Assembly (NCBI GenBank): GCA_964035545.1
Contig: OZ037767.1
Coordinates: 29,342,628 to 29,406,627 of the forward strand
From: Bugula neritina
Taxonomy: Eukaryota > Animalia > Bryozoa
DNA: 64,000 nt
Direction of reading: 5' to 3'
Below are positions 19,801 to 44,200 of the stretch, piece after piece. The first letter of the stretch is position 1. Each line of letters begins with the position of its first letter. A program made the translations under genes and the position numbers. The notes below the pieces were generated by a model that saw only the letters and a program-made list of their open reading frames with translations, made no database searches and was not told the DNA's origin.

Positions 19801-20635
19801 TATACATGTATGTACATATGTATGCTGCGTATGCATGTGTACATGTATACATATATGTACATATGTATGCTGCGTATGTACGCACATGTGATACCAATTG
19901 CTGGTACATCAATCAAACACTTTCTTGGAGCCACAATGGGGTCAGCTTGTATATCATTTAACTAATGCTTTAAGATGGTCTTGCAGATAGAAGGTGTGAC
20001 ATGGCACATTGATAAAGTCAGCACGGCTGTTAGAGTGAGAGTCGCCGTCAAGACCTCCAGTGAACTGACTAGCAGACTAGCATATTTTCGGAGTCTGTGA
20101 ATCTGTTCAAATACAAGGTGCAATCCAGTTGGTCTTACTTGAATATGCATAGTAAAATCACTTGTAACAGATAGCTTTTAGCATTGCATTAGTTTTTTCA
20201 TGAATTTGTGACTTGAAGAAAAATCTGGACATCATGAGATACTTTCAGTCTGGTTTTTATACTCACTTATATTACAAAATGCTGGGACTAGTTCCACTGA
20301 GTTGAAGTTACAATGAGCTCTCGCTAGAGAAAGGTAATATTGAAGTTTGCTACACAATTCAAAGTTGTATTCATGCTTAGTGTAGGAGGCTACATTTTAT
20401 TAACTCATTTTAAGCTGTGTTGGATGTTACACATTTTAATGAAATGCATTCTTTTAGTGATTCGTTGAGCATTTAGTAATTTCAGACTGGCCTCTACTTC
20501 ATTCATTAATAACTTTCTTGTCAATGGTGAAATGTAACAAAGGTTTGTTGCAATAAATACTACACATTTGTTTACTTTGTGATCTGAATATTACAGGAAT
20601 TGTTTCTGGGAAGTTGGGGAAAGGTTAAAGACTAA
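16809..20635 (+). CDS. Divergent cyclin-fold-like protein; 3' part of the model does not join cleanly (possibly degenerate)
   Basis: Exons 16809(ATG 16814)-17393, 17772-17983, 18097-18235 and 18368- join in phase. They give SLYSTDLLRSYL / LLQLVTHVASLK / ELLRMRDTKLKILGYLDYSFKLPTALDWLQYL / GYLPVVLA, which follow the order of cyclin-box motifs. There is a TAG at ~18433. Further exon-like segments 18533-18759 and 20597-20635 have good splice sites but cannot be reached in frame. Confidence 0.5.
18772..19270. repeat. Minisatellite built from GTGTA blocks (units of 15/20/25 bp, e.g. GTGTAGAGATAGTGTAGTGTACACT)
   Basis: Directly visible; begins ~12 nt after the donor GAG|GTACAG at 18759/60; explains ORFs 18712..19338, 18729..19280 and 18908..19147. 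Confidence 0.95.
19720..19890. repeat. ~36-bp alternating purine/pyrimidine minisatellite
   Basis: Unit approximately CATGTATGTACATATGTATGCTGCGTATGCATGTAT, ~4 copies; explains the four overlapping ORFs at 19682-19965. Confidence 0.9.
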
Positions 20636-23059: not shown

Positions 23060-23175
23060 CATCGCTACAGGTAGTTCTGTAAGCTACATCATACATTGCC
23101 ACAGGTAACTGTGTAAGTTACATCACACATTGCTACAGGTACATGTAAGTTACACATTGCTACAGGTACATGTAA
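23060..23175 (+). repeat. Four-copy 27-34-bp tandem repeat, each copy with YACAG|GTA
   Basis: AG dinucleotides end at 23070, 23104, 23138 and 23165, immediately upstream of ATG 23195. Confidence 0.85.
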
Positions 23176-23194
23176 ACCTGTGAAATCAAGAGAC

Positions 23195-23275
23195 ATGAGT
23201 TACTCTGGTAAAGCTACTAAGAAGAAGTCATACTTCAGGCGTCATAGTCTGGATACAATACTCTTTCCTACGCAG
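23195..23275 (+). CDS. RhoGAP variable first coding exon A1 (MSYSGKATKKKSYFRRHSLDTILFPTQ), phase 0
   Basis: gacATG, 27 open codons, CAG|GTATGT donor; a possible non-coding upstream exon ends at 22217 (CTG|GTAAGT). Confidence 0.65.
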
Positions 23276-26200
23276 GTATGTATCTGTCTGTTTGTTTGTC
23301 TGTCTGTCTAAATACCTTTAATATACACTTTAATTGCTATTATTTAATATACTGCTAGCAAATTTTTAGTAAATTTTCTCAAAGTGTATTTAACTTAAGT
23401 TGCATAAAGCTGTTTTACCTTTTGGCAACCTACACTTTTGAAGGCGGTAATTGGGCAGCAGCTGTTTAAAGAAACATGTGTAATTGCGGACACAAAGGAA
23501 ATCACTCTAGTCATCTTTCTAGACAATGACATTTGGGTTGTTTGAGCTTCTGTTTGCTTAACATTATATTGCATGAGTGTTGGAGTTGTAAAAGATGTGT
23601 TAATGAGTATTAATGAACGCATCCTTTGGCAACAAGACCCTTTTAGTTTCTCACTGGGGGTGCAGGTCTATTTCATGCCCGAAGTATAGCATAGCCCAGT
23701 TACATGCACTTTATCAACTTGCACTGACTACATACTTAAACTTAGTAAGAGGACGTGGGTTGTTATCGAAAAATGCACCAACAATGCTGACTGACTATTA
23801 ATGTGAAAAATATTACTCCCAGCAATGGCTAATTTGGATATCAAGATAATAGCTAATTTTAACTAGTATTTAGGGAGAATGATGTACTCATTTATAGTCT
23901 ATTGCAGCTAAATAAATGCATACATCAAAAACATCGGACAAACACATTTGCCAACAAGGAAATTATTCTCCAATATTTCTGACTGTAGGCTCTTAGTAGA
24001 TTATGGGTGTCACTAATTGGGTAAATAAATAAAGTAGTATTATAGGATAATCTGATGGTGTTGTTTAAGCTGTGATCATAACGCTATTAATATAACTAAT
24101 GATGCATCTATGCCAGTGTAATGAGAAGCTTGTGGTCTGTAACAGCGTATATTGTGTATCCCAATGACCTCTCCAGTCTGCGCAGTATCTCTAGTGGGGT
24201 ATAGGAAAATGTTGAAACATAAATAAAGCACTCTGTAGTTCAACAAACGATAGAATATCTCATTCCAGAACTGGACATCTAGGTAAACTGAAGCATTAAA
24301 GTTTTCTAATAATCCTAGAGTTGAAATTTTTAAAATGGCCTTTCAAAGAAGGTGGCATAGGAAATCATGATGAGGAATTTAGGCCCCGTTTTTTGTAACT
24401 TTTTTTTCTATGGGGGTCAGTACAACGTACAAGTAGATATATTCTGTAAACTATAGCTGAGCTGCATTTGATGTCAAAGTCATTTAAACTGTATGATTTT
24501 TGTAGCTGAACCAACTATACAAAAATCTAATGTTAGTAGTATATATTACAGTTAGTCCGTATAAAAATGTATATGTACTTTAGTATTACTGTAGCGAGTG
24601 CATATTAAGAACATGTATTACTGCAGTAGTATTCCTGTATAGTTGTTGAAAAACTGAATATGGGCTTATTGTTATTGCTGGCAGCTATCCAGCTAAAGGT
24701 GCCAAAGACTCATTTCATAATTGCTTACACTTACATGGTTTTGCTCTCTCACATCAACTCACCTGAATTAGCAATCATAATAATAGTTACATAATTATTC
24801 CCAATAGAAATATCTCGGAGTTAATTATGTGAAGTTAACCATGATATTAGCATAAAATATTAACTTCTAACTCTACTCTTATGGGAAGCGCAGAATACCT
24901 CAAAAAGGTCTCCTTTACACAGGTACTGGCTGATAAGAAGGAGGGAATAAATGATTTTGTTACCACTTGGACAATATATTCCTAATAGTAAAAAACAAAA
25001 TTTAAATTTTATTAACATAAGTTGTGGTGTTTTCTACAAAAAATTCAATAATCTCACAGCTTTCTCCTACCTTTCTTTTTACCGGAACAACTTTCTCTGT
25101 AAAGTATATAGAGCTCTGTTATTTGGCTGGTAACTTAGTAGAAAAGGGTCCACTGCTCATGTCTAAGTAAGCTCATACTGCAAATTGAATTCAAACTATA
25201 ATGTACTGTTTTTTGCATAATGCTTTATTACCAAAGATTTTACTTAGTAAAGCTCTATGTTATATCTTGACATAAACTCCATTGATGAATGAGTGTTGGT
25301 GCTTATATGTAAAATAATGCTGCCATAACCTACCATTATTATCAGCTGAATTCCATACAGATAAAAAGAGCATCTATAGAAGCGAGTCTATTTAAAACAT
25401 TTCCTGTACAGCTGACAGCTAGTCCAGTTGGCTAGTTGGTCATTAATCTATGGTTTATGTCACGGATGTACTAGGATATACCACTACATTCATGGATTAT
25501 CAAATTTTCAAGAAGATTTTCTGTAAAAAAAGTGCAAAGTTTATAGCCTTTATCAAGGTTTTATATACACACATTTCTAGTTAGAGGGGTGAGAACTATA
25601 AAAAATGGAGTTGTTAGTTCAAAGTTTGTGTAGTGAGCTGAATTATGTTTTATATTTCATTAAAATTTTAACCGGTGCAGCGTGCTGTCACAAGAGCTTT
25701 TTCGGGGACTCTGGTTTGATCCTTCATGCCAGATAACTCAACAATTTTACGACATTTAGGAAACTGTAGGTGGACATAATAGGATTCTCTCTTCAAATAT
25801 TGATATTCTCTATACACTTTTCAATCTTTGTATTGTCAAAACTTTCCTCTATTGAAGGCAGCGTGCCCAGTATACTCTTTGGTTGGTCCATCAACACAGT
25901 TTCTAATTATTTTGTATACTCTTTGGTCCATGCAGAAACACATTCTCTAATTATTCTATTGATGTACAATCACTCAGTAATGCAATAAATCAAATATAAA
26001 AGAGTCTTTTATTGATTGATTAAGGTATTTAATTTTCAAGTTTTGTCTCCAGTGCTCCTGCATATTTACCTACTGAAAGTTTTTTTTTAACTTCATAGGA
26101 TACAAATATGTGCCTTCGGGTTATTTTTTTACCATTTATTATTTGTAATTTATAAAAAGAGAAGCAAACATCCTGTTTAATATACAGTACCATTATTAAA

Positions 26201-29200
26201 CCCATGTGTTTAAGGGATAGAATTCCTATAGGCTGAAATAACATATGGTTAGAAATAATCTAGTTAATATAGAAGGCTTTATTTTGTTACATTTCGTTAA
26301 AAATTTACCTATGAAAGTTATTCATGCATAGCAAAACATGTACTGGCCTTGCGGGATCAGCACATTGTTAACTTAGCCTAGGGCCACACGGTGCGTATTT
26401 TCGCATGCGAAAATTGAAATCACGAGTAGCAAAGGTGTCCACTGTACGCGTTGAGAAAACATTCGCACTTGTCGCTCAGCATTCTCAACGCAAGTGCGAA
26501 TCGTCTTTGTCGTCGTCACCTAAGTGGCTGGTAGTTATTCAGCGAGCCCAATTTCTTCATTTTAGTGCTACATTCCAATAAATTGCGTTTTAGTGAAAGC
26601 GAGTGCTATTTAAAAATGAAAGCTTTATTTATCACGCATCACTGACGCTACAGTGGACACCTTTGCTACTTGTGGTTTCAATTTTCGCATGCGAAAATAC
26701 GCACAGTGTGGCCCTAGGCTTAATGTGCTGGAATATATCTCGTAATCAACAACTGTCAAAACTGGAGTTGTCTTTTCTTGGATTAACATGTTTACGTTTT
26801 ATTTTAATGTATATAATGAGAATAAATATATGAATACTGACTAGCTAACTCAAACTTGATTAAACTTTTTTACTAGGCAACTCAGCAATGTCTGGTATTT
26901 GTGGGAAATAGTTTTCAATTTCTGCTAAAAATTAACTAAATCTATTTCTTATGTTGTCCCAGCTTGGTTATACATTTCTCTCATTGACATGCTTGTAATA
27001 TTTTGCTTGCCATTGTTTATTATATTTGTTTTCTTTAGAAAATTGGTGTAAATAGACAAAATTATTTTTGCGGTTTTCTCTCTTTTTCTCTCTCTCGGTG
27101 ATAAGTCACATAAAATACAAGAGTTGAAAGCACAACTAGACACACAAACAATAATTTCTAAAAAGAATATCTGTATTGTACACCTATATATTCACTCTAT
27201 TGTCTAAACAGTACAGATCACCAACATAATACACCTTTCATTATTCAATATTTACCGTTTTGTATGTAACTGTCTAAATCAGAACCCAGTTTAACTCTCA
27301 GTGGTGGTTAGGAATATGATACAAAATATTTCTATAATGCTGTTTACAGCTGCTGGTACACAATTTCAATACATTCTATATAACTGTTAGTAGAATAGAC
27401 TACTACTTTATTCTGGTGTGTGGTGTTTGACTTATACTGCTACAGCTTGTGGTGTGTGTTATATAAGGGGTGTTCTACCATGCAGTTAAGGCCATGTTAT
27501 ATTATGAGTAACATTTTGAAATTGGAAATTTTATTTAATTCCTTGCTTGTAAAAAAATGTGATAAGAACTTTTTATTGACGTTGGTGGTGCTGAAGCACA
27601 CTCAGTGAAATAGATATACATATATAATTACATGTATACATACAGGATATAAAGAACACGGTATATATTCTGTATACAGTATGCAGAATAAATAATATAG
27701 AATACAGCAAAGTCATTTGTTAAAAGCTTTGCCTGTTTAAATTTATCTACCCTTGGGAATAAACACAAGCTTATGTAGCTATGAATTTGATGCATACTAA
27801 TTTACTTACTGAAACAAGTGGATTTTGACACCCAAGTTGTTTAGGTTTCGTCAACCATAGAGATTGACACGTACATGTTGTTTTAGCTAAACATTTTAGG
27901 GTATAATATTATTCAACCAACACATTATATTAAAACCAATGTGCGGTTACTTGCTAAGTTTGAGATATTATTTAGTGCAGTGCAATTAATATATTATATA
28001 TCTATTGTGTTAAGTAAGATACTAAATATACTTTAGATAATGCTTACCTTACAACATTCAACTGTTCAAATTGGTTCTCAAATAAAGAAATAACTTATTT
28101 GTTTGTGTTTTGATAAAGGATATCATATTATAAAAATAACAAATAACAAATAAGTAACTGTGAGTTTGCAGGTATGAATAATACCTGTAAAATAACAATG
28201 AGAATATTACCACATGCAGTGAATTGTTCACCTTAATGGCTGTATTCTTGTTACATACTTCTTCAAGTGTTATAAAAAACTACTTGTCTAATATAGCAAT
28301 AGTCTGAATTCAAACTTATGAATGTGGAGATGATTGCTACATCAAAATGGAATTTTTATGGCACACAGTTGAGATAATATCATGCAACTTACTCAAGTTA
28401 AGGACATTGAACTGTGTATTCTTATCACCATTTGAATCAAGCAAAGTCAACGCTTTTGCTTGGCCTATAATACAACACCTGACACCAAAGTTCCACTGCT
28501 AAAACCTCTATCTTTATGGTGTTTGGTTGTTGATAAGAGTTAGGTATCATTTTGCCTTGCTCTGCCAACAGAGTGAGATACTGACAAATATCGTTTCAAC
28601 GCTAAGTAAAAACTCAAAATGTCGGAGTTAATAACTGAGGAGGAGATGGTAAATAAGATCAAGTTTCCTACTGGTAGAGGTAAGTGAAAATACTCTTTGT
28701 TTTTATCTTCATCGTAAATATTACTTTGCTAATTAATAAAACTTGTTGTAAATTTCCAAATGGTTATGGGTTTCAACAAATATCTCGTTTATATTTGCAG
28801 ATCGAAAATATGGCACAGCATCTACGTCTACTTCTACTTCCACCACATGCAGCTCACCAACAATTCACATCACAACAAATGAATTGGTCAGAAATAAGTT
28901 GCCAATCCGTCCTTCTCTAGAAGTTGCAATCAGCTACGATTCCCAACTAGATGATGTCTTTACACCAACTAATACTTCAAATGCTATTAGGGAAACTTCC
29001 CTGCCAACTTGTCCTGAAGAATCTGGTCATAATGGCACCAGAAGAGCTTTGGAGAATATCAAGACTGCATTCAAAGAACTATCTCCTAAAAACCGGCGAC
29101 GGAAAAAGAAAGCTTACCAGCGTTCTGCAACTGATGAATTGACTTTTCTATCCAAGTCCAAGAGACCGTTTTCTGTTGGTTTGGACTACAAGAATTCATC

Positions 29201-32200
29201 TACTGTAGATTCAGATGGCACAGCTGAAGAAAAAAGTTACTATAGTGACCAAGAAACGTATAAAAAAACAAATAATCGTAGAAGCTCTGATGAAATTCAC
29301 AGCAGGAAATCATCTAATCTAACGCACAAAACCGGTCTCATGTCCAGTTTAAGAAATTTGTTTCAGTCTTCAAAGCTGGAGAACTCTAATTCCTTCGTCA
29401 AAGTAGAAAAACTTAAAAAGCTGCCCGCTCATAAACATGGCAGACAAAGCAGTGATAGTTTAGTTGAAAATATAAACTATGACTCAAAACACTCCGATGG
29501 ACTTCAATATAGGCGGTCTACGCTAGAAGATGGAAATGATGCAAAACTTCGCTGGAAAACTGCCAAGTCTCGGAAACAAGATAAGCCTGTGGTCATGTTA
29601 GACTCAACTGAGCTAGAAAACCAGAACACAGTCTGCTTGCTATCTGCGGGTTTGATTACAGTCATGAGTCAAACTAGCCTCGAGTTTGAGGTGAGTGAGC
29701 AAAATTTGGGTAGGTTGGCGGCGCAACCTCGAGTAGTATAGAACACTTAATATTAAATTCTTAGCCTACACATCATGTATACAAAACAATTTGTATTTGC
29801 TGTACCATGAAAGTGATCGATTTTATAGGAAAATTTATGAATTCTAATAAACTAGTAATTGTACTAAGATTAATAAAAAGAATTTATTGAAGGCTGCAAC
29901 TGGGGTAGTTTCAAAAAGCTTGTGTTCAAATGAAAACTTTAACAAAAAGCTGAAATTTGATTCAGGTATTCTAAAAATGATGACGTTTAAGGCCGTTACA
30001 ATCAATCTAGTATTACAAGCACTTACTAGTAAGAATTCATACATTATAAGCATGGCTGCTTTCTCCAAGGCAATTCTTTTGAATAATAGTATGAAGTGTT
30101 GAAAGCTCTACAATAACAATAGGTTCACCACTTGCTGTTAGCAGTTATCTACTAAAATAGCTACTAGGGGAAAGATAACATGCCACTGGTCAAGTTTCCA
30201 TGTGTGTGTAACTTAATGTGTTATATCTAAAGTTTTAGTGGAGCCTACAAATTTTATTCTGGTAAACATTTCAAATTTGAACTTGGCGTCTCCTCTGGTG
30301 TAAAGCATTTGGTGTAAAGGATGGAAGTTGTAATATATATAACTATGTAACAATTCTTCTATTTTCCCCCAAGGAAAATAATAATTTTAGTTTAATTGAG
30401 CTCCATCTGCCCAGTCAAAACATTTCAAAGTTCATTTTAATAATTTATATGCTCTTTGGTGGCAATCTATGTAAGCCTTTATATACCATCTTTTGTACTG
30501 TTGGATCAAACACTTTTGTACGTCCCACTACTGACACTAGCATTTATGTTGATTAATATATATATATTGTGATATGATAAAACCAAACTTAGCTATAACA
30601 TGCAGATATTTTATGGGCTTCATATACAATCAAGCTGGATAGCTATCATTCAATGTGATGGAAATTTGGACAAACTTTCAGGCTGTCTATCTTAGCTGTA
30701 GTTCTTAGTGTGCTCACAGCTATATTTATAATATTATTATGTAATAACATGAAGCAAGATCATAGACCAAACAATTTGTTGAGGACATACAGAAAGTGGA
30801 AAAGTGCAGGGGCCGTGCACTCGGTAAGGCTGTTATAGGCTGCTGTACTTCCGTTGAAAATAATTATTTTGTATTGATGTTGATATGTTTTATTATTTCT
30901 GAGCCCTAAAGTTGTACCCGTAACTGAATGGTTATTTGTTTACATCTCATTCATTAATGTCAGGTTCCCATTCAAATACAGCTAGTTATACTGGAGTCTT
31001 TTGAATGGCATCAAATTTGATTAGTCGCTTGTGTGAGTAGCAACAAATGGATATGAATTGGCTTCTGGATATGCTGGCTGTATCAAATGACGGGCATTAC
31101 ACTATAAGGGTTGAGTAAACATTTGGCAGCTAAGCTTTGTGCGATTAACTTATCTTATTTGCTCATGGGTGTTACTGTGTGTGTCTAAAGACAGCTTGGA
31201 AAGCATTGGGGACAAACACTTTTAGTTACACTAATCACTGATAGCAGAGCTCTTTTCTGCTACTGGATTGCTGCCTCAGTTCACATCAAACACATTTATT
31301 GTGTTCAACTAAAAGGATGAGATATTAAAGGCGCTGAAAAAGACAACAAATTTCATAATGTCTCAAACTCCAAAGACCCCTCGGAATAAAAAACTTTACC
31401 TGGATATAAAAATGCACAAGAGTCACAGTTTCAATGCTATGGCGGATCTTAAACTTCCCTTTTCAAAGTTCCGGAGACCTAAAAATAAAAAGGAAGTGTA
31501 TCAGTCGAAACTGGCCGATCTGAGTTACACGTCTGCTAGTAGAGCAGTGTCAGACGACTCCACTTCTGTTGACTCTCTGGATCTGGACGTTTCGTTAAGT
31601 TATTCGCCTCTTCCCGGGGTGAGTTCTCTTCTGCTGACTTCCTGAGTCTACGTGTTCCTTCTAGTTAATCATCTCTTTGAAGGGTTTGGGGGGGGGGGAG
31701 TGCCTCACTTTTGTTGAATCTTTGAGTCTGAATTTTTCTTTGAGTTACTAACCTTTGAAGAAAAGGGGAAAATGATATGAGTCCTTTCTACTAACCGGTA
31801 TTAGTCAAAGTTTTAAACTGCTTATAGGAAAAGAAATTTCATGCAAAGTATGTCTTTTAGCTTGCTACGTAATATAAATACATTACAACTAGTCGCTATA
31901 AGTTGCTGATTGTGAAGTGGTGCAGACCGGACTAACAGCTTATTTAGATAGCCTTGAATCTAGTAGACACATCCTTCAGCATGGTTCTTAGTTCATGAGA
32001 TTTGATTATTCTATTTCAACTTCAAAGGACTTTTAACAGTTTGTTAAAGCAAATATTGAGGTAATAAGGTACCATTTTAAAGTGCACCAAATGGCAAGGT
32101 ATAGGTATTGTCATTGTGATTAGTGTGTTTGCATTTATTAAATTTGAAGATCTGCTTTTACAGAGACTTTCACTAGATAAATCATATTACAAGCAACCCA

Positions 32201-35200
32201 TACATTATATCGAAACTATTATAGGCTATTAAATTTGTGGGGTTGTTAATTTAATTGTTATAGCCCTTCAGGTTTATCAAATCATTGGTCCCAGGTTTAT
32301 TATTTTCAAGGACATTTTTGTTGTATCTGTTTTTGCCATCTAGTTGTGCTGGTGGTATATTATTTTGCACTTTTATAGCACGTAATTGTGGTGTAGAACA
32401 TAATGTTCTTTAGAAAAGGGGCTGTTCACCTTACTTTGGCTGTTATTATCTAACACTAGATTGTCATCAGATAAATATCGGCACACTTATGACCTCTAAA
32501 TTTATCATTGATGCATTCAGGTATTTCTAGTTTTTCCTAATTGTCACAGATTGCATTTAAGGAGCTGTTATTCAGCTAGAAAATGGTCTGACTTGGCACG
32601 CACAGATCTCTAACCTCACTCGGATAATATGCTGTATACATTCAGGTTTAATTTAGTTCAGTTTTGTCGAAGGTCAATAAGGTTATGACTGGAAATCTTA
32701 GGAGAATCTATACAAATCTGTCTGCCATACAGCATTGTAATTTTCTATGCAAGTTGAATGTCCTCTTTGTAGCTCTAATGCTTATGTTTATAGTGTCTTT
32801 GCTATGAGTAGCTGTAGACAATATTGACTTCAATGTGTTCTATTTGTTATTACAATGTTTTATTATTACTAAACATTAGTACTGTACTTATATGAATCTG
32901 ATTTGTGTCTGTTCATGGATTACACCATTTTACTAGCTACTGGAAGACAATACTAGTCGAAATTTAACTTGATGACCTCAAAACAATACGTTAACCCAAA
33001 AGAAAGACAGCTTTTATATAATGACACTCATTAAAGATAGTGTCAAAAGATTGTTCAATATTATTAATTATTGATAAAGTTTCATCAACAGCTGTGGTAC
33101 TGTGACAGTACAAATATATTGATAAGAATTGGGCTACTCTATACATATGTTGCATTTAGTAGTACAGCTGATCATTCTTTTATAAAAGGGTCTATAAAAC
33201 ATTAACTATTGTATAAACTATAGTTTGCTCTGAAGTTTATCACAATGATCACAATGATCACAATATTATTATATTCCCTTTAGTCGGTCTCTTTAAATGA
33301 TTCTACCTCCTCATTGGCTAATGCATGTGATGTTAAAGCAAGAGACTGGTGGGTGCACTTAACACCTCACCTGATTGAAGCACCTATCTAAAGCCCAAAC
33401 ATTATCTAATCATTGTTGATACTATCAAAAGCTTCATTCAGTCATTTGATATGACTTTGTAGCAGTTTGTTATTTGGCAAGAGGCATTGTTATAGTATTC
33501 TCGTTGGAATGAAGTCATTACTTCTACAATCTCTTCTTGGCATGTTGTTTTGGATATAACCAATCTTCGTTGATTCCTATCTCTAGTAATCAGTTCATAT
33601 TTACCAAAACAGTCAAAAGAAATGGTGAGTTTTCTATTACTAGGATTGTTGACATAGCTAATACAGATTTTATTTCCGATGATGCTGGTACAGGCACCGC
33701 TGTTGGCAAAATGTTTTTACGTTTACTCATAGCAACTTTAGTATAATGCTGCTAGCTGTAGGACTTGCTGTAATGGCGAGCTATGCTGAGGGTAGATTAT
33801 CTCCCCATTCTCAGCCGAGTGTGTACATTGTTGACCAGTAAATGAACGTAGGCATAGCTTCTGTTTTATGGGAATATAACTCAGAGTTTTGATTGCTCTG
33901 TCCAAACACTGCAGCCAATGCTGCATCAGATAATGCATAATGAGTGACTGTACTTGTGTAAAGATGTTTTATAGATATCTGTTGTAGACAAATGCTGCTT
34001 AGTGTAATGCAGTGTGGTGTAGTGCAGAGCAGTGTTTCATAGTGCGTATTGCATAGTGTAGTGTATTGTATTGCAGTGTGGTGTAATGTAATGTAGTGCA
34101 GTGTACGGTAGTGTAGTGTATTATTGTATGTAGTGTAGTGTAGTGTAGTTTAGAGTGGTGTAGTGTAGTGTGGTGTAATATAGTGAATAGTGTATTATTG
34201 TATGTAGTGTAGCAGAGATGTTTCTGTAAAAGAGAGTCTACTATAAAACAGTGATACACTGAAAACAGTATCAAAGGTTAGTAGGACTATCTGGTGAAAG
34301 GTGTTGAGGGCTGATGACTTCACCCATTAAAAACTTCAGAGTATTACTTCTTATCATTGTGCTAGACTTTATGAAATACTTCTGCTGTAGACTGCAGGGC
34401 TATTTCTAGTATTGCCATTAGCATTACTATTCAAATTGTGTAGGCGATATATTTGTTTGAATAAAGTATTATATAAAATGCTGATTACACATTGAGTGAA
34501 CCTATTTGCCTCCCTACATCTGCCATTGTGAATTTAATGATAGACTTCTTCCGACACCAACTGAGGGGATTGAATGTAATTGGGTTGTGCATCTCTTCAT
34601 TTAGTAGCAAGATGTATGTAATTTACTCCATTCATAAATTTGCATCCAGTAATTTAAAATATGGGACCATACAGCCCGGGATATGTGTCACCTCATTCCT
34701 TTCTTTCAAACTAAGGCAATTTTGAAAAATCTTGTATAGCATCTTTTTATTTAAAGAATCTATTTTTTCAATTTAAATTTTGCGTTTTCAACTGTGGCAA
34801 CAAAATGAGCAAAAGTTTTTTGATGCTGCTGGCAGTGAGGAAATAACTTCATAGCCTTTCCTGGAGAATAAAATGATTATTTTTATAGATAAGCATACAA
34901 AAGTGGGTTTATATTATTTCTAGTTTTATAACGAATTAGATAGTTGAGTACCGATAATAGTGTAAAGTTGACAGTTCATGCAGAGTCTCACAAGCTGTAA
35001 CGGCAGCTCACAACCTATGCTTTATTGAGACCACAACTCCCAATCATTGTTCAGAATGAGTTACCAGACCATACACTAGAGCCAGTCTGGTAAATATATA
35101 AAGAAATAGAAATAAAGGGAGAAAGTTATTATCAAACAACATGTAAAATTAGCACCCACACTCTCTTGTTAGCATTTGACATGCATTTTAAAGACACATA

Positions 35201-38200
35201 TTTAACAGAACTAATCCTGTTGGTATTCCAGTCTTAATATTATAACCTATTGCATTTCTCATGCCAAAAAAATAAAACTTGCTATAATCACCACATTATA
35301 CATCTTGTAAGTAAAGAAAAGCAGGAACTGCATTTTTGCAACATCATAATATTTTCTCACTTTTTATCTGTCAACCACTAATTGAATTTGTTTCTGGATT
35401 AGACTTTTTGCATTCACCTTTTGCTAGTTCAAAATATAACTGTAAGTGAATGTTGAAACATCTGTCTACATTTTACTGACTACCCCTAGCCTATTCAGAA
35501 CGGCCACTACTGTTTTTTTACAGATCGAGTCTACCAACGTTATTGTCACCTCTTATATTATATTTTATAAATTTTTGACAGGTCCAAAGACTGGAGTTGT
35601 CGGATGTTGCAGCAGGCATCAGCAAACTTAGTCATGCAGAATCGGATGAGCAGCTGAACCAGGTGGGTGCAGGTTCTTTGGCAGCAATTTGTGTCTGCCA
35701 TTTGTGTCAGCCATTTGTGTGGATCAACAAACATAATTGAAAAAATCACAGTAAATAAATATGATTTTGTAAGTCATAGCTAGTAGATAATGCAAGCTCT
35801 TTCAACTTTCAACTATAACATAATTTTTTATGTTATGAAACAGAACATAACATGATTGAACGAAGACAAATTATGTTAAAAATAGCAGCTATGCCAAATT
35901 TGGAGTTACTAGCTCAACAAGCTGAAATGACAACTCTCGGATTATTAACTATGACTATTGTAATACTAGTTATATTATTATTAGTAATAGTGTTAGCTGT
36001 AATATAAACGGTACTATTCAAAGCAGTAGTAATATTAGTAAAAGTTGAACTAGTGGTACTAACAATCATACAGCAGAATATTTTCTCAGATCTATGAAAC
36101 TTAATAACTGATTAGGAAATACGCAAGATGTATAAAGTAATGTATGGTAATAGGCAAAAATAGCAAATACAAAATCAAATACTTTCTGATATAAGCACTT
36201 CTTGCGTGCATGTGGTAACTATCAGCTATCTTTAGTTCACATGATGACAGTTTAGCTAACTTGGGTTTTTGTTCTTATAGTTTATGAAACATTTAGAACT
36301 ACAGGAGCCTGTCTTATAAGCTAAATATCGAGTAATTGTTAAACAGTTTGAGATTTAAATGTAGCTTCCCTCTTAAGCAATACTTGTACGCCTTTGAAAA
36401 TTAAAAAAGTTTCAAAAGGTTTAATTCATTTGAAAATGTTTGAAACAAAGCTTTAACATTGAAGAGTAGTAAACAGACTACCCAGTGTTCATGACAGATA
36501 ATGAAGCAATATTATTTGTTTGTCTGATATGGGCTACTATCTAAACACAAATGACAAAAGCATTTTCACAAAATAAAATTAGTAATCACTGTTTGTGGTT
36601 ATTCTCAGGGGTATACACTGTATACACATTTGTTTACAGAATCGGCTTCTATTGTTTATGATAACTGATTGATTGGTCACACTTGATTGTTTGTATACAG
36701 TTTATGTAGCAGTAAAATTATCTCTAGTTTGAATCTCATAGCCATAGCCTAGATATATTTAGTGTTGACTGGCATCTGCTCTCTCATTGTTACACACGTG
36801 ATTCCACCACTCAAGTGTATTTGGCTAAAAACATGAATATTAAAAGCCCATGAAGTAAGGATTAATTCAATTATAGCTTTTCCAGTCTGATATTGCTGCA
36901 ATGTCACTGCTAAATCATAAGCTTTTATTCGGAGTTATGTCATCTAATCAAATGTGATCACCTTCACTGATTTATATAAATTTATCATGGAGCCTTGAAA
37001 GCTGCCACTCGCCATATCTTGATTGCTGTTTTTATTTCAACAGACACAACTATGCATTCCTGCATTCTCTTCATCACGTCACATACCTTACTAGCATGAA
37101 AACACTTTTTGGCCGAGTGTATAAAACATTGAATCATAACATCATGCATTCAGGCATTCGATAGGGTTCCAGTGTTAGGTTTCTCTTTCAAGGATACACT
37201 ATTATTCTCTATTATATCACTGTTATCATAGTAGCTATCTGGAAATACTTGGGCTAAATAACGTACACAGGATACAAATATTGCACTACATGTTGCCTAA
37301 CCATGAATAATCCTCATGAAATGTGTCAACCTCTGAGTTAATTCTTCAAACATTCACTATCATTTGATAAGACTGTTAACTAAAGGATAGTCCAGGGTTG
37401 AGGTGTAGTCTGAGTTTCAGATATGATGTCGGATAAACCAGCAGCGGCAGCGAGGTTTGCTGCCAATAGGCAGGTGTCTGATAGCGCATTACTCGATCAT
37501 AAGAAGGTAAGACTATGACACTTTTTTAGCCAAGGTGCTTGTTGGACTAGAGAAAATCTTATTTTCGTAGACTTCAGTTACAGATAGTTTCTACATCTAG
37601 TAGCTTAATTATTTTCAAAGTCTTCGTTATTTTTGTCTGCTTTCCCAGAACAGCGTATGTTTCACATAGTTACTACCATTCTGTTACCAGTCAATTGAGT
37701 TTGAGACATGAGAACATAGTTACAAATGAATTGGGCAGTGAGTCTATTAAATTGTAGTTGAACACTGCTTACCATTAAAATCAGCTAGTTTCAAGTCTTT
37801 AAATAGTAACATTGAAAATATATTTGTCTTAATATATTGTGTCTGCCATTGCTGACGGTGAAAGGTTTTGGGTTCGAAGTCACCTGAACTTAGCTCCATG
37901 TATCATTATTGATTTAAAAAGAAAAAATAAGTTTCTAAACACTAAATATAGTATATTCTTACTAGCTTGTGTATAATGCAAAGCCCAAGGTTCAAAATAT
38001 AGTTAATCAGTTGTCACTCATGGACTGATAATATACCAAAGGCAGCAAAATTCATAAAACTCTCCATCTTTAGAAGGAACTAAAATAGCTGCTAGGCTTG
38101 CAAAAGTGTTTAGAGCACTATCTAGGAATATCTGAAAAATGAGCAAAGTTTTTTTTATATTTTTTGCATATGTTTTTGCAATCAAAGCAGAGTAATGAAA

Positions 38201-41200
38201 TAACTAGAGGAGATAAATTGCTGATGGAAATAGTTTGTTTAATAATGGCTATGCTAAAACTGCATCCTTTGAAGATAGTTAATGAATAACCTATTTTAAT
38301 TCCACAGACATGTAAACAAAGAAGAACTCAAGAGCTTTGTTGGCAAAATATCAGTAATTAAATCAGCAAATTTTAATGATCAGACAGAAATGCTGTTCAG
38401 CATTTGATCATTGTTTTTCGAAGAAGGGCATGTTGCATCAGTCTACTGCATGGGTTTTGTCTATAGTACCCAGACCTTTACGTAGGTTTTGCTAGATATT
38501 TTCAAAAAATTTTGACTCTTGCTAAATTGATTACCACAGAGACACTGCAATAGTTTAAATTCTTATAAATCCTATATGAACTTTGGGTTGAGGTTGTTAC
38601 AACTGTGCCTTTACTGTAGAACATTGTTACACAAGCTATGATTGGATACAAGGAGACAATTTTTGTCATACTTTTCTTGGTTGGCTGAAAAGCTCTCAAA
38701 TGGAACCAAAGTTTCAATTGTCAAACATTTATAGAGGCTTTTGGTTTATTATAGATAGATACTTCAATGTTTGTGGAATTGCTGAAATGACTGAAAATAT
38801 TAATTTTCTATAGCTACTAGAAAATTGGTATCTCAGCAAGTATTTGGCTATATTATTATTATTATGTAATCCTTGTTAGATAAATAGTTGGCCCCACATC
38901 AATTGACTTTAAATAGTATGTCAATATAACAGATTTCGCCATCTAAACTTATTGCCAAACTGATGCAACATAATAATAATGAAACATCCTCTTGTTTTGG
39001 CTCAATTAGATAACATTTGGATGAACCACCTCTTTTCTAATTTCGTGAGGTTTAAAATAAATTATTTTTGTGAATTTTCCAAATTTCAAATGTCACTACT
39101 TGAAAGCTTAGTGTAAAATATTTTGGCCTTGCAAGTATGGTTTTTACGGCACTCCCACGCCTAAAAGCTTAAAAGTTTGGCGGGTTACCATTTAATGGTT
39201 ACATACTTTTATATAACACATATAAACATTGATAGTATGACCATAGTCAGCTTTTTTGTAAATTGCTTTACTTCTAAAGCGGTAGCAGTTAGTGGAATGT
39301 TTAAGGAGGTGATAAGCTGAACCTGTAAACCTCTCAGAATGAAACTACTAAACTTGAGGAGCTTTGAACTGCCCTCCATATTCCATCCACCATTGTCAAT
39401 TGTTATGATAATGGACACTACTATCTTATCACTGATAGCAAAACTGCCTGAGTATTTTCACAAGGTTGGGGCACGGCAGAGGGCTTCCAGTGTTTAGTGA
39501 TGCGAATAGTACCGAGACTATTTATGCTTACTGCAATTTGTCGAATGCTATTGAAGAGTAGCTCACCACAAAGTGTTTTTAGTATCCCTTCACATTGTTT
39601 CATAGTCATTGAGTATTAACTGGGCAAACAATAAGATCTGCTATTAAAATTAGAATTTCTGCAGCTGCTAAAACAGTTTATCAACAATCAGCTAGTCAGT
39701 TACGATGAGATCCACTCAAGTCACCCTTTCAGTTCTCTAGTGGGTAGATAGTTTGTTAGTTTAGTATCTTTTTAATGGAGGACAATATGTCAGCCAGTAA
39801 ACCGAATAAACCACCGCGATTGCATGGCAGGAGTGTAAGCCTTGTAGAGAAGGTAAGATTACGTAATTCCAATGTTCACATGAAATCAATACCTCTCAAA
39901 TGTAACAGAATTTGTGAGAAAGTTGCTATATATTTGACTGCTATGTATCAGTTACATGTTGTATAAACACTTTCCCACTTTATTGCTGACTTCTTCAGTG
40001 CTTGTCCTGCCAACATACGCTGCTGATTTCAATCAACTTGGTTATGTAACTAGCAATATTTATGTTGATTTATAAGACTATTTGTTTAGGCAACTATTCA
40101 TGTCCACTCAACATCCAAAATATTATTATATTGAAGAATAGTTAAGAGCTCAAACCATATCACCATGGTTACAGCAAGCTGCCCATTGTACTTTAATCTT
40201 AAGTGTTGGCACCTCACAATTGTAACATTATCAAGACCTCTGTTAGTAACTAATGTGTAACAGTAAGAGCTGCCAGCTGCAGTAATTATTATCTAACTCT
40301 CAGCAATTGTTCATATTTTGGCAGCGATAATACCTTTTTATCAGTTTTCAGTCGGTGCCTAGTACATGATTGTAAATACAGTGATTACATGATATCTCCT
40401 TATCTGTCGACAGCTCTACAATGTTATACTTGACACAGTACATGTATGCCTATATGTATTCAAGTAGCCATCTCCTAGCGCCTAATGTTACACCATATAA
40501 GTTGGTGGTATAGTTTAGTATGTACTTGCATAGCATTGTCATTGAAATGCCACTAGATGTTGTTCTGAGTTTCATTTTCTATCAAATTCATGTTCCTTCT
40601 TTTAGATTGTAGTTTTGAAAATTCCAACGGAGCTTAGATATTAGGCACCTACTAAAATCAACAAACCTTAGCATGCATCCTTTAGGCCCATTGTTCTACT
40701 AATAGCTAATTTCCAGTATATATGCTGTATCAATCTACAGTGACAAGCTATTCTTTTATTTAATTGAAAGCCCTGAGCCTGGGAGTATTTGTTGAAGATC
40801 TTGGAAAATGATATCTGGGACAGTTAGTGTTGTACCAGTTGGGCTCAGAATAGATCCACAAAACTGCAACAGTGCCAAACTTGCAAAAAATTAATCAAAA
40901 GTCCTTGTCTTTTAATTTCTAAAACTTCTAAAGGCTGTTAACAAAATTATGTCTTACGAAATTCCCAGCTATAGAGTTTCCTGTAACACAGAGAATTGGA
41001 TTAAATGGAAACACTGTGTGCCCAGAAAAGGGAAAATCTGTAAAGTGTATCTGAATACTTTTCCTATAATAAAATGATTGCAAGACAGGGGAAGATAACT
41101 TCTTGGTGCTACGTTTTTCATATCACAATCATGTCTAGAATTTTTGGTAACCTTCTTTGCAAACCTAAATCTCATATTTATGTCAACGGACAGTTTAATG

Positions 41201-44200
41201 GTTTTACAAAGACGCCATATTTAAATTAACTAATAAAACAATAAAATAATAAAATGCATGGCAATTTCTCAGTAACCCTTTCTCTATCAAATGTATTAGT
41301 CACTGCAGTGCGCTGCTTGCCAATCTAAATGTACAAACACACTTGGTGCTGAGCCATAATTTTGGCCATAATTCATATAGAATATATGACTAAAGTCAGT
41401 TTAAATCACTATTATCAAACTTTTTGGCATAAATTTACCTTATCTCATTTTTGATCTGGACAATGGAATCAAAAGCATACATATCCACAGCTATTCATAT
41501 GCTCTCATGTTTGTGTTTTGCTTTCATGTTTGATGTTTTCTTTCCATTTGACACCTTAGCTAGCGTTATGGCTGACCTAACATCAATTATGATGTAAAAC
41601 TATTCTCATGGAGATGTAATAATGGTGTAATTGTTATCATATTAACAGAGATCGCTATTTGATTATCTGGTTGCAATTGTTGTAAGGTGATATACTATTG
41701 TTCCAGTGTCCTGAGTATTTTCGATTGACAGGAGAAGTTAGGTTATATAGAAATGAAATTGGAGAAGATAATTTCTATAGGAGAGTGAACTAAATAGCTT
41801 CAGTGTATCCGTTTATGATAGTTAATATGATAGGCTTGTGTTTAATCGTGTTTTTGTGACAGGAGATAACTTTGCGCTGTTTTGCAGTTAATTTTTCAGT
41901 TTTTTGTGAGAGTATAGAGTTCTAACAGGTGCATGCTTTAGCTGTGACGATGAAGCAACTAATAACCAACAGAATGTCAAAGGATAAAAAAGTTCTGAAA
42001 CTGTTTAAAAGCATGATCTATATTTATCTACTTCTTATTGAATTAGCAACTATATGTCACTTCCAGTGGCTAAATCTGCATTGAGGTCTTTTAGTGGTTG
42101 CCATGCCAACTGGCTGTTCACCAGGATTATAGGGCTACTACACAACACTCCTACTACCCTATAAAGTGTATACTGTTCACAATGGCACATCTTTGAAAGC
42201 CAATATGCGGGTAACTCCCCAACGTTTTTGCTAATTACTTGGCAAGTTGAACGCAATGGTCCTGCAAAGCTATTGCGTAAACTTTACATGCCAAATTGTT
42301 AGCATAAAGAGGATGTTGGAGGCATTTAATAGCACTTGGGGAGAAATATTGCTATGAGACTGATCACATCGCCTGCATCTCAAAGAGATTTACTTAAAAA
42401 TTAATAAGTTATAAATTTTGAGGAGTGACTAATATATCCTAATATCAGGAAATGCCTCGTACTTTTCGGTCAAAAAGTTTAGTTCCTTTGGGTATATCAG
42501 CCCTTGGCTGGGGTTGCGATTGCTACAACTGTAAGCTGGGATTATGGTCATATATGGGGGAAGTGAAACTGCTGAAGGTTGGTAGTGTGATCCATGTTGG
42601 TTGTACGGTTAGTAGCATAGTGAATCGGCTAATGTTATTTGAAAGGTTTTGAAGAAATGTTACATTTTTTCACTAGGGAAGGTTTTATTTTTCTTGCAAC
42701 TAATCAGGAGTTTAGCCTATTTAATTAAATCATAACAATATATCAGTCATTACTCTACAACATGCAAATCCGTTGACACAAATATTTGTAAAATTCAATG
42801 GTAAGAAAAACACATTCCAACACTTTCACTTGCTCCCTCAAACAAGCTGGTGAAACAGGATATTACATGTCAGGCATTTCCCTCCATTTTTATGATAAAA
42901 TTGTCTGTTGACGTAACCAATTGAGTCACAACCCCACTACTATGACTACATTGTTTATATATTGTGTAACAAGAATGATTATTTATGTTTGTAGTCAAAT
43001 GAGCAGAGTACCCTCTCAAGGATTGAGAAGTTGTTCCCACACGATGACTTGGAATTAAATTCTTCAGCTGATAAAAAACCTCGGAGAAGAAGATCAGCAC
43101 CGAGTCAAATTTTGCTTAAAAACTTATACAGACGAAGTGGTACTGGCGATGAGGTGGGCATGAGTAGGGTACCCCCACCTTCTTCAGAGGTTCCAATGAC
43201 AAACCCAGACTTTGTGTCAAGGAAGTTCATCTGTGAGTCGGCGGTGCAGCTGTCAGCTGGAGTTCAAACCCAACAGAGATACATCTTCCTGTTCAATGAT
43301 TTACTATTCATAGCCAAACAGAGGTAAACATAATCTGACATTAAAATTAAATAATCTTGAAACATTGCCGAAGACTTGCACCTCATGATTGGCTTAGGTA
43401 GAATGGATTATCTCTATTCTCATAATTTGTAGTTTATTAAAGGTTATGGTAGAAGCTAATCTCAAACGATTTAATGCCCTAGTTTCCGTTAATACATTTT
43501 TAATGTCCATTGTCAAAATTTAGATCCTCATAAATTGTTATGATGTTATGTCATTAATAGAGTTATCAAATTTATTGTTATTTTATTTCCCTTTATTATG
43601 TGAGCTATTTGATTAGGATAGTTTGTTTATCTAGTGCTATTCCATGTAATGATATATTGTGCAGGTCTTCCACTAGTTATAAATTGAAGAATAAGCTACT
43701 AGTGTCTGAATTGTGGATCACAGACTACATAGCTGGAGTGAGTGAGAGCACAGCTGACCCAACCAAGTCATTTGTAATCGGTTGGCCTACTACCAACTAC
43801 ATTGCTACCTTTTCCACAAAAGAGTTATGTGACAGATGGAAAGACAAATTGAGGCAGTAAGAATTTAGCCATCTTTTCCTAATTTTTTAAAGTTTGTCAA
43901 CAACAGAAGCCTAACATTTCAGGAGTTGCCTGCTCCTAGAATTTGTTAAATTGATACGGTCTCTGTATTCAGTAGATTTGTTTTTATAATAGTTTTGGAT
44001 GAATGCCAAAATACTACCAACTCCATGGAAAAATATATTATGGCATGAGATCAACTTTTGTAACGAGAATATTTTGACTTTATGGCAAGCTGCATAGTGG
44101 GTAAACTAGTTGCTGTTTTCTAACTTATTTTTCATCACAAAAAACAGTTTTCATGTCATTGTTACAGTTAGTTTCTAAATCAGTGAAACTGAAAGAAACG

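What the first reader, a model, noticed from the sequence alone, without database searches (positions are those of the whole stretch)
23195..43323. Cluster of at least six phase-0 variable first exons feeding one constant RhoGAP body (variable-constant locus)
Seen: over 20 kb there are six ATG-initiated, mutually non-homologous mini-ORFs, each cut by a strong donor exactly in phase 0 (ending at 23275, 29690, 30823, 31618, 37506, 39852). The first constant exon (42995) and the shared exon at 35582 both have phase-0 acceptors. Known: variable-first-exon arrays exist in plectin, UGT1 and clustered protocadherins. Inference: this ARHGAP20-like gene makes many isoforms with N-termini of 25 to ~317 aa from separate promoters. 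Unlike UGT1 or Pcdh, the variable exons are not paralogous, so they would have arisen independently. I do not know of such an array being described for this family. Caveat: I found the exons by eye, so selection for the expected phase is possible.
Basis: partly seen in the sequence, partly recalled or inferred. Interest (0 to 1): 0.88.

Follow-up and report, generated by a model that had tools for sequence, protein, structure and literature searches.

The report
Alternative first exons of RhoGAP gene
One invertebrate RhoGAP (ARHGAP20-like) gene really carries a row of interchangeable start exons that give the protein different short front ends, two of them seen spliced in RNA of a sister species; the design is real but is a common, well-known way of building genes.

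Summary
All six phase-0 donors are at the stated coordinates. An unbiased ATG-ORF-donor scan of 21-43 kb finds exactly these six in phase 0, against 1 and 0 in the other phases. Simulations expect 0.8 per phase, and none of 500 reached six.

One correction: the 29690 unit has no ATG of its own. A 61-nt mini-exon (28619-28679, phase 1) supplies it, giving 317 aa.

RNA-bearing contigs of a congener (about 90% identical) show three splices: 28679>28801, 37506>42995 and 39852>42995. So two variable exons join the constant exon directly and exclude each other.

Related taxa conserve ATG, frame and donor for the units ending at 29690, 30823 and 31618, and conserve the 35582 cassette. The 23275 unit has no support beyond the scan.

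In this lineage the constant exon has lost the ATG that nine related taxa carry, so the variable exons must supply the start codon.

Separate promoters remain untested, as do the junctions of the four upstream units.

This is a plectin-type alternative-first-exon locus: a new member of a known kind. The scan noted similar arrays on other DNA of this genome (a TIR gene and a guanylyl cyclase gene).

The parts
23195..23275 (+). E1: candidate first coding exon, 27 aa (MSYSGKATKKKSYFRRHSLDTILFPTQ), phase-0 donor CAG|GTATGT. Prediction only.
   Evidence: found by the unbiased scan. Single copy in the genome. Two wobble-tolerant pattern scans of metagenome contigs found no relative. No RNA evidence. 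Plausible phase-1 acceptors lie in a short tandem repeat just upstream, so an internal-exon reading is not excluded.
28619..28679 (+). E2a: mini first coding exon, ATG plus 20 codons plus 1 nt, phase-1 donor GAG|GTAAGT. It supplies the start codon for E2.
   Evidence: the only phase-1 unit in 22 kb. In-frame stop 3 codons upstream of the ATG. ATG, frame and donor kept in the congener. Spliced to 28801 in congener contig L004 and protein P0003.
28801..29690 (+). E2: 890-nt internal coding exon (296 aa, Ser/Lys/Arg-rich, no Pfam domain). Phase-1 acceptor, phase-0 donor GAG|GTGAGT.
   Evidence: Against the congener: 32 synonymous and 18 non-synonymous codon differences and no indels, while the flanks carry indels. 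34% identity over 305 aa in a distant taxon (L002/L003, E 5e-41), with acceptor position, phase and GTGAG donor conserved. Single copy. No Pfam hit.
30749..30823 (+). E3: candidate first coding exon, 25 aa (MKQDHRPNNLLRTYRKWKSAGAVHS), phase-0 donor TCG|GTAAGG.
   Evidence: ATG, frame and donor kept in four congener contigs, although divergence is near neutral (8 of 75 nt). In distant taxon L003 a syntenic unit lies between E2 and E4: ATG + MDKHRKWKSVWSIYP + GTGAGT in phase 0. Shuffle p = 0.001. No junction evidence.
30900..31357 (+). Conserved non-coding block upstream of E4: putative promoter or 5' UTR.
   Evidence: 97-98% identity to the congener against about 87-90% in the surrounding intron. 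The function is inferred.
31358..31618 (+). E4: first coding exon, 87 aa, phase-0 donor GGG|GTGAGT.
   Evidence: 6 differences in 261 nt against the congener. 49% identity over 78 aa in distant taxon L003 (E 2e-14), starting at the same ATG (MSQT...) and ending GGG|GTAAGT in phase 0. Only unspliced contigs were found, so there is no junction evidence.
35582..35662 (+). S: 81-nt (27-aa) phase 0-0 cassette exon. It is available only to transcripts that start upstream of it (E1-E4).
   Evidence: 56% identity over 25 aa (E 5e-7) in a third taxon (L005/L006), 7.7 kb upstream of that taxon's constant exon, with an AG acceptor, a GT donor and a length of 84 nt. No junction evidence.
37423..37506 (+). 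E5: first coding exon, 28 aa (MMSDKPAAAARFAANRQVSDSALLDHKK), phase-0 donor AAG|GTAAGA. Spliced to 42995.
   Evidence: the joint listed as 37504>42993 is GT..AG with a 2-nt ambiguity, so it equals 37506>42995 (run X2). In run X1 the loose end after 37506 reads the first 17 letters of the constant exon, and the loose end before 42993 reads the last letters of E5. In-frame stop 3 codons upstream of the ATG and no usable acceptor.
39775..39852 (+). E6: first coding exon, 26 aa (MEDNMSASKPNKPPRLHGRSVSLVEK), phase-0 donor AAG|GTAAGA. Spliced to 42995.
   Evidence: an X2 contig covers 39786-39852 and runs on with the first 15 letters of the constant exon. In-frame stop 5 codons upstream of the ATG. 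A similar unit (..THVRSFSLLDE|GTAAGA, phase 0) lies 2.9 kb upstream of the constant exon in a third taxon; that similarity is weak (p = 0.046).
42995..43323 (+). C1: first constant exon. Phase-0 acceptor, phase-2 donor. Encodes the RRRRSAPS motif and the start of the RHG20_PH domain. No in-frame ATG at its start in this lineage.
   Evidence: Pfam PF22286. Junctions from E5 and E6, and onward to the next exon. In nine related taxa the exon starts ATGGAT.. directly after the AG, whereas here and in the congener it starts TCAAAT...
43665..43857 (+). C2: second constant exon, the rest of the RHG20_PH domain. The 3' end given is approximate.
   Evidence: Pfam PF22286, profile positions 33-92. The loose end after 43323/43325 in X1 and X2 reads the start of this exon. 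Frame.
58086..60227 (+). Exons of the RhoGAP domain in the constant body, with an intron between them. Includes the EIFRK arginine-finger segment. Given for context.
   Evidence: Pfam PF00620, profile 5-61 in 58086-58259 and 96-147 in 59655-60227. tblastn of full-length homologues.

Best explanation
This is a single ARHGAP20-type gene (PH, RA-like region, RhoGAP) whose 5' 20 kb holds an array of alternative, mutually exclusive coding 5' exons.

Each variable unit brings its own ATG and ends in a phase-0 donor:
- E1, 27 aa
- E2a+E2, 317 aa
- E3, 25 aa
- E4, 87 aa
- E5, 28 aa
- E6, 26 aa

All can be joined in frame to the phase-0 acceptor of the first constant exon at 42995. The four units upstream of 35582 can also pass through an optional 27-aa phase 0-0 cassette. 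The products share the PH-RA-GAP body and differ only in a short, basic, Ser-rich, probably disordered N-terminal peptide. That peptide sits just before the conserved RRRRSAPS motif and the PH domain.

In this lineage the constant exon has lost the ATG that related taxa carry at its first codon. A full-length protein therefore needs one of the variable exons.

Shown: exon boundaries and phases; non-random phase bias; splices E2a>E2, E5>C1 and E6>C1 in RNA of a congener; coding conservation of E2, E3, E4 and S in other taxa.

Inferred: that each unit has its own promoter; that E1-E4 splice to S or C1; that the N-termini tune tissue expression, localisation or regulation. At least five of the six units are taken as real. 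E1 is about even odds.
For: - Phase bias 6:1:0 on the gene strand against 0.8 expected per phase; 0 of 500 simulations reached six.
- The single phase-1 unit fits the phase-1 acceptor of E2 exactly, and the two are spliced together in congener contig L004 / protein P0003.
- Read laying on 37400-43399: a GT..AG joint 37506>42995 in X2. Loose ends at 37506 (X1) and 39852 (X2) read the start of C1. The loose end before C1 in X1 reads the end of E5. Exon depth exceeds intron depth: C1 3,500-4,800 against about 710 in X1, and the E5-C1 contig 2,559.
- E5>C1 skips E6, so the two are mutually exclusive.
- In-frame stops lie 3-5 codons upstream of the ATGs of E2a, E5 and E6, with no usable acceptor.
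- Purifying selection on E2: 32 synonymous against 18 non-synonymous differences, no indels.
- E2, E3 and E4 stand in the same order, with the same ATGs and phases, in a distant taxon.
- S is conserved with both splice sites in a third taxon.
- The constant body is one gene.
- The ATG of C1 is lost here.
Against: - No junction was seen for E1, E2, E3, E4 or S. Only one 6-kb stretch could be laid.
- The one transcript-like contig through E2 (L004) runs on into the intron after 29690.
- All RNA evidence comes from a congener, from one sample, as assembled contigs.
- Those runs also cover introns evenly, so they hold DNA or pre-mRNA as well.
- No TSS data exist, so 'own promoter' is untested.
- E3 diverges at the neutral rate between congeners.
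- E1 has no support beyond the scan, and about one chance phase-0 unit is expected in 22 kb.
Confidence: 0.8

Rival explanations
1. Some units are chance ATG-ORF-donor coincidences and not exons. This applies mainly to E1, less to E3. The true array would then be four or five units.
For: - About 0.8 chance phase-0 units are expected in 22 kb.
- E1 has no comparative or RNA support and the second-weakest donor score of the six, 5.75 bits.
- E3 has the weakest donor, 4.6 bits, and near-neutral divergence from the congener: 8 of 75 nt, 6 non-synonymous against 2 synonymous.
Against: - E3 keeps ATG, frame and donor in four congener contigs.
- E3 has a syntenic counterpart with ATG, the RKWKS core and a phase-0 GTGAGT donor in a distant taxon.
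- E1 has a good start context (A at -3), and all six units fall in the one phase that fits the acceptors.
Confidence: 0.45
2. E2a+E2 is a separate nested gene, or a terminal isoform. Its transcript would run on past 29690 and end in the 'intron', giving a 333-aa protein without the PH-RA-GAP body.
For: The only transcript-like contig through E2 (L004, protein P0003) has the 121-nt intron removed. It then continues 412 nt past 29690 and reaches a stop after 16 more codons.
Against: - The GAG|GTGAG donor is kept in three taxa, while the read-through tails are unrelated (VSEQNLG.. against VSLHLF).
- Its phase matches the downstream acceptors.
- The same contig also extends 576 nt upstream of the ATG, as expected of partly processed pre-mRNA in runs that cover introns throughout.
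Confidence: 0.12
3. The units are used from one or a few upstream promoters rather than from one promoter each. They would be mutually exclusive internal exons behind shared non-coding leader exons.
For: - No TSS evidence exists.
- The X2 contig carrying E5>C1 extends more than 1.4 kb upstream of 37400.
- L004 extends 576 nt upstream of E2a.
- E1 and E3 have possible acceptors upstream of their ATGs.
Against: - E2a, E5 and E6 have no usable acceptor and carry an in-frame stop just before the ATG.
- A block conserved at 97-98% lies directly upstream of E4, as expected of a promoter or 5' UTR.
- The upstream extensions are equally explained by the DNA or pre-mRNA present in these runs.
Confidence: 0.15
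4. The exons chain serially into one long N-terminus.
For: All donors and acceptors are phase-compatible, so a chain would stay in frame if acceptors existed.
Against: - Direct junctions E5>C1 (skipping E6) and E6>C1.
- Stop codons 3-5 codons upstream of the ATGs of E2a, E5 and E6, and no good in-frame acceptors.
Confidence: 0.03

Closest known systems
Plectin (PLEC) 5' region: twelve alternative first exons spliced into common exon 2 (PMC8468861, read)
   Same: - Several non-paralogous first exons, each encoding a short isoform-specific N-terminal peptide.
- All spliced to one common acceptor.
- Small optional cassette exons nearby (2alpha/3alpha there, the 35582 cassette here).
- The body of the protein is unchanged.
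   Different: - A different gene family, and six units rather than twelve.
- In plectin, promoters and isoform functions have been shown experimentally. Here only two junctions, from a congener, are shown.
- One unit here (E2a+E2) is two exons and 317 aa.
Clustered protocadherins and UGT1A (variable-constant loci)
   Same: A tandem row of alternative first exons joined to shared constant exons.
   Different: Their variable exons are large paralogues that encode whole domains. Here the units show no significant pairwise similarity and encode short, domain-free peptides.
Multiple variable first exons as a general feature of animal genes (PMC2780955; Zhang, Haws & Wu 2004, cited there and in PMC8468861 but not held in the library)
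   Same: Alternative TSS and first-exon use that changes the N-terminus. In that study 30% of newly sequenced human full-length cDNAs differed in TSS, and 261 first-exon variants were tissue-specific.
   Different: None in kind. This locus is simply one instance, with more coding first exons than most.
Vertebrate ARHGAP20 (PH-RA-RhoGAP, Rap1 effector; from my own knowledge)
   Same: RHG20_PH and RhoGAP domains, and the RRRSAPS motif just before the PH domain.
   Different: - No array of this size was found described: no paper holds both 'ARHGAP20' and 'alternative first exon'.
- The closest full-length homologues in the protein library are mostly DH-PH-RA-GAP proteins, and no DH domain is encoded in this window.
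Other arrays noted by this scan in the same genome (s1-451012, TIR gene; s1-441597, guanylyl cyclase gene)
   Same: Rows of phase-0 alternative first exons upstream of a shared exon.
   Different: Different genes. I did not test those notes.

Membership tests
ARHGAP20-type RhoGAP (PH-RA-RhoGAP) | RHG20-type PH domain (Pfam PF22286) | tested here: met
   43031-43324 matches profile 1-33 (38 bits). 43600-43857 matches profile 33-92 (62 bits). The curated cut-off is 27.7 bits.
ARHGAP20-type RhoGAP (PH-RA-RhoGAP) | RhoGAP domain (PF00620) with the arginine-finger segment | tested here: met
   59655-60227 matches profile 96-147 (46 bits). 58086-58259 matches profile 5-61 (21 bits, below the cut-off for that piece alone) and contains EIFRK. 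Whether the GAP is catalytically active was not tested.
ARHGAP20-type RhoGAP (PH-RA-RhoGAP) | Ras-association (RA) domain between the PH and GAP domains | tested here: inconclusive
   One weak tblastn match of a homologue's RA region lies at 45573-45791 (E 3.6e-4). Pfam RA was not detected in the single exon tested.
Variable-first-exon / constant-region locus (plectin type) | Three or more alternative 5' exons, each with its own start codon | tested here: met
   Six ATG-bearing units. Five have comparative or RNA support.
Variable-first-exon / constant-region locus (plectin type) | All variable exons splice to one common acceptor | tested here: inconclusive
   Shown for E5 and E6. Phase-compatible but unobserved for E1-E4.
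Variable-first-exon / constant-region locus (plectin type) | Mutually exclusive use | tested here: met
   The E5>C1 junction skips E6, and E6>C1 exists separately. Stops lie upstream of the ATGs. Shown for this pair only.
Variable-first-exon / constant-region locus (plectin type) | Each variable exon has its own promoter or TSS | not testable with these tools
   Only assembled contigs were available, and they show no starts. The conserved block upstream of E4 is indirect evidence.
Protocadherin / UGT1-type variable-constant locus | Variable exons are paralogues of one another | tested here: not met
   No pair of window units is significantly similar in Smith-Waterman alignments against shuffles (best p = 0.019 of 55 pairs, uncorrected). 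E2 has no paralogue in the genome.

The most novel reading that the evidence does not exclude
The array is an old module, conserved across several divergent taxa, of at least five non-paralogous coding first exons. It has become obligatory in this lineage because the constant exon lost its own start codon. It stands where the closest full-length homologues carry a DH (RhoGEF) domain. On this reading, interchangeable short N-terminal peptides replaced a catalytic domain as the regulatory front end of an ARHGAP20-type GAP.
Probability: 0.3. Interest if true: 0.45.

Novelty: new member of a known kind. Interest (0 to 1): 0.3.

Why it matters
For annotating this genome, the gene needs at least five or six 5' isoforms, one 61-nt start exon that is easy to miss, and one cassette exon. 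Automatic models are likely to pick one start or to fuse several.

For biology, the locus gives a clear case in an invertebrate RhoGAP of N-terminal diversity made by first-exon choice. The start codon can come only from the variable exons. That makes isoform-specific knock-outs straightforward: one ATG per isoform.

It does not reveal a new mechanism. Alternative first exons are among the commonest sources of isoform diversity in animals.

Tried and rejected
1. Shared phospho-motif. The N-termini looked as if they shared a basophilic R-x-x-S or HxRxSxSL motif. R..S counts are no higher than in shuffles of the same peptides (p 0.17-1.0). Pairwise similarity among the window's units is not significant. 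The idea is dropped as evidence and kept only as a remark that E5, E6 and a third taxon's unit end alike.

2. E1 in relatives. Two wobble-tolerant patterns scanned against metagenome contigs found nothing. A blank there says little.

3. Spliced E4 products. The protein search with E4 found only unspliced read-through ORFs.

4. Congener proteins through C1. None is in the library. The search did yield genomic fragments from nine related taxa.

5. DH domain in the window. A profile built from the homologues' DH regions, searched against all six frames, gave nothing (best E 0.41).

6. The plus-strand gene at 16.7-18.8 kb as a possible 5' part of this gene. No Pfam hit, no PDB hit, and only a weak Atlas hit (0.86). 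It stays unidentified.

7. No RNA run of the window's own species was on offer.

Full report
**What the window holds**

The DNA is AT-rich (33% GC) and has long introns.
- On the plus strand, from 42995 on, lies an ARHGAP20-type gene. Pfam RHG20_PH is split over 42995-43323 and 43665-43857. RhoGAP is in 58086-58259 and 59655-60227.
- Full-length homologues from the protein library match only from 42995 onward.
- A PRPF4-like gene lies on the minus strand at 1-13 kb.
- An unidentified plus-strand gene lies at 16.7-18.8 kb.

**Checking the observation**

- Five units begin with an ATG: 23195, 30749, 31358, 37423 and 39775.
- The sixth, ending at 29690, has an open frame from 28752 but no ATG before 29340.

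It took every GT with a generic donor score of at least 4 bits, preceded by an ATG-ORF of at least 20 aa, in all three phases.
- The gene strand of 21-43 kb gives 6:1:0.
- The opposite strand gives 1:2:0.
- Markov simulations give about 0.8 per phase, and none of 500 reached six.
- Other thresholds give the same picture.

The one phase-1 unit (ATG 28619, donor 28679) lies 121 nt upstream of a good acceptor at 28800/28801, and that acceptor is itself in phase 1. So the '29690 unit' is really two exons.

**RNA evidence**

No RNA run of this species was on offer. Two runs labelled metagenomic RNA-Seq (X1 and X2, one sample) come from a congener about 90% identical in introns.
- A 1.9-kb contig from the same series of runs (L004; its product is P0003) lacks exactly 28680-28800. 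This proves the E2a>E2 splice.
- Laying X1-X3 on 37400-43399 gave a GT..AG joint 37504>42993. With its stated 2-nt ambiguity this is 37506>42995 (X2).
- A loose end after 37506 in X1 reads the first 17 letters of the constant exon.
- A loose end before the constant exon in X1 reads the last letters of E5.
- A loose end after 39852 in X2 reads the first 15 letters of the constant exon.
- Depth over the constant exon (3,500-4,800 in X1) and over the E5-C1 contig (2,559) stands well above the intron level of about 710.

So E5 and E6 are each spliced directly to 42995, and E5 skips E6.

Caveats:
- These runs also cover introns evenly, so they hold DNA or pre-mRNA too.
- Contigs cannot show transcription starts.
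- Everything comes from one sample of a sister species.
- X3 (this species; library type not on record) shows no joints. That argues against retrocopies.

**Comparative evidence**

Against the congener (L001, 6.1 kb):
- E2 has 32 synonymous against 18 non-synonymous codon differences and no indels, while its flanks carry indels.
- E4 and the 450 nt upstream of it are 97-98% identical, against 87-90% around them.
- E3 diverges at the neutral rate but keeps ATG, frame and donor in four contigs.
- E2a keeps ATG, frame and donor.

A far more distant taxon (L002/L003) has only 34% identity in E2 and 69% in the constant exon. It carries E2, an E3-like unit and E4 in the same order:
- E2 has the same phase-1 acceptor and GTGAG donor.
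- The E3-like unit is ATG + MDKHRKWKSVWSIYP + GTGAGT in phase 0.
- E4 has 49% identity, the same MSQT start and a phase-0 GGG|GTAAGT donor.

A third taxon (L005/L006) shows:
- the 35582 cassette with both splice sites (56% identity, 84 nt);
- one ATG unit ending ..THVRSFSLLDE|GTAAGA, 2.9 kb upstream of its constant exon. This resembles the ends of both E5 and E6.

At least part of the array is therefore old. E1 could not be found in any relative and remains a prediction.

**Are they first exons?**
- E2a, E5 and E6 have an in-frame stop 3-5 codons before the ATG and no usable acceptor. They start translation and are very probably 5'-terminal.
- E4 has only weak acceptor candidates and a conserved upstream block.
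- E1 and E3 have possible acceptors, so an internal-exon reading is not excluded for them.
- A separate promoter for each unit is an inference.

**An added point: the constant exon has lost its ATG**

In nine related taxa the constant exon begins ATG GAT GA. directly after the acceptor AG. Here and in the congener it begins TCA AAT. The next in-frame Met lies after the RRRRSAPS motif. In this lineage, then, the start codon of the full-length protein has to come from a variable exon.

**What the N-termini are**

They are short, net-basic and Ser/Thr-rich, with no Pfam domain. I looked for a shared kinase or 14-3-3 type motif. R..S sites are no more frequent than in shuffles, and the units are not significantly similar to one another. 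E5 and E6 may still be old duplicates.

The likely role, by analogy with plectin, is promoter-specific expression plus isoform-specific targeting or regulation next to the PH domain. This is inferred, not shown.

**Comparison with what is known**
- The architecture matches plectin: twelve first exons into exon 2, short isoform-specific N-termini and small optional exons (PMC8468861).
- It does not match Pcdh/UGT1, whose variable exons are paralogous.
- Variable first exons are widespread in animal genes (PMC2780955).
- This scan has noted similar arrays in two other genes of the same genome.
- I found no paper that describes such an array for ARHGAP20.

The finding is real and now better supported, but it is a new member of a known kind.

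**Limits**
- Only one 6-kb stretch could be laid.
- No junctions were seen for E1-E4 or for the cassette.
- No TSS data exist.

Noticed in passing
window 42995-43000; L005:10001, L008:2071, L012:4913: The first constant exon begins ATGGAT.. directly after the acceptor in nine related taxa. In this genome and its congener it begins TCAAAT.., so the exon's own potential start codon has been lost in this lineage.
   Followed up: yes
proteins P0012, P0013, P0014, P0016, P0025, P0028; window 1-43000: The closest full-length homologues carry a RhoGEF (DH) domain directly in front of the RHG20_PH domain, giving DH-PH-RA-RhoGAP. No DH domain is encoded anywhere in this window. The variable exons stand where those proteins have the DH domain.
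   Followed up: partly
G000:C5:8635884-8636540 (minus strand): A second RHG20_PH-type locus exists in the same genome. A DH-domain piece (E 7e-9 to a profile of the homologues' DH regions) lies just upstream of its PH match. This may be the DH-bearing paralogue. No RhoGAP match was seen within about 20 kb downstream.
   Followed up: partly
window 49816-50017, 51095-51308, 55193-55328: The same unbiased scan finds three ATG-ORF-donor units downstream, all in phase 1, inside the constant body. They fit the separate note s1-472256 about internal first exons. I did not examine them further.
   Followed up: partly
window 16670-18789 (+): Three long plus-strand open frames (242, 113 and 89 aa) lie between the PRPF4-like gene and E1. 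They have no Pfam hit, no PDB hit and no convincing Atlas match. This is an unidentified gene. Whether it has any link to E1 is unknown.
   Followed up: partly
window 37400-43399, runs X1/X2: The runs are labelled metagenomic RNA-Seq. They cover introns evenly (about 710 and 110-140 word depth) and also contain spliced junction contigs. They therefore mix cDNA with DNA or abundant pre-mRNA.
   Followed up: no
window 40862-40930: In the congener, 67 nt here are replaced by 34 unrelated letters: an intronic replacement, not a GT..AG splice.
   Followed up: no
window 18712-19338 and 19682-19965: Long open frames on both strands are made of repeated short units (..HSVHYT....MYTCIH..). These are minisatellite-like tandem repeats just downstream of the unidentified gene.
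   Followed up: no
window 23100-23190: A short tandem repeat (ttgctacaggtacatgtaagttaca) lies directly upstream of the E1 ATG. Each copy carries both a cag|GT and a GTAAGT motif.
   Followed up: no
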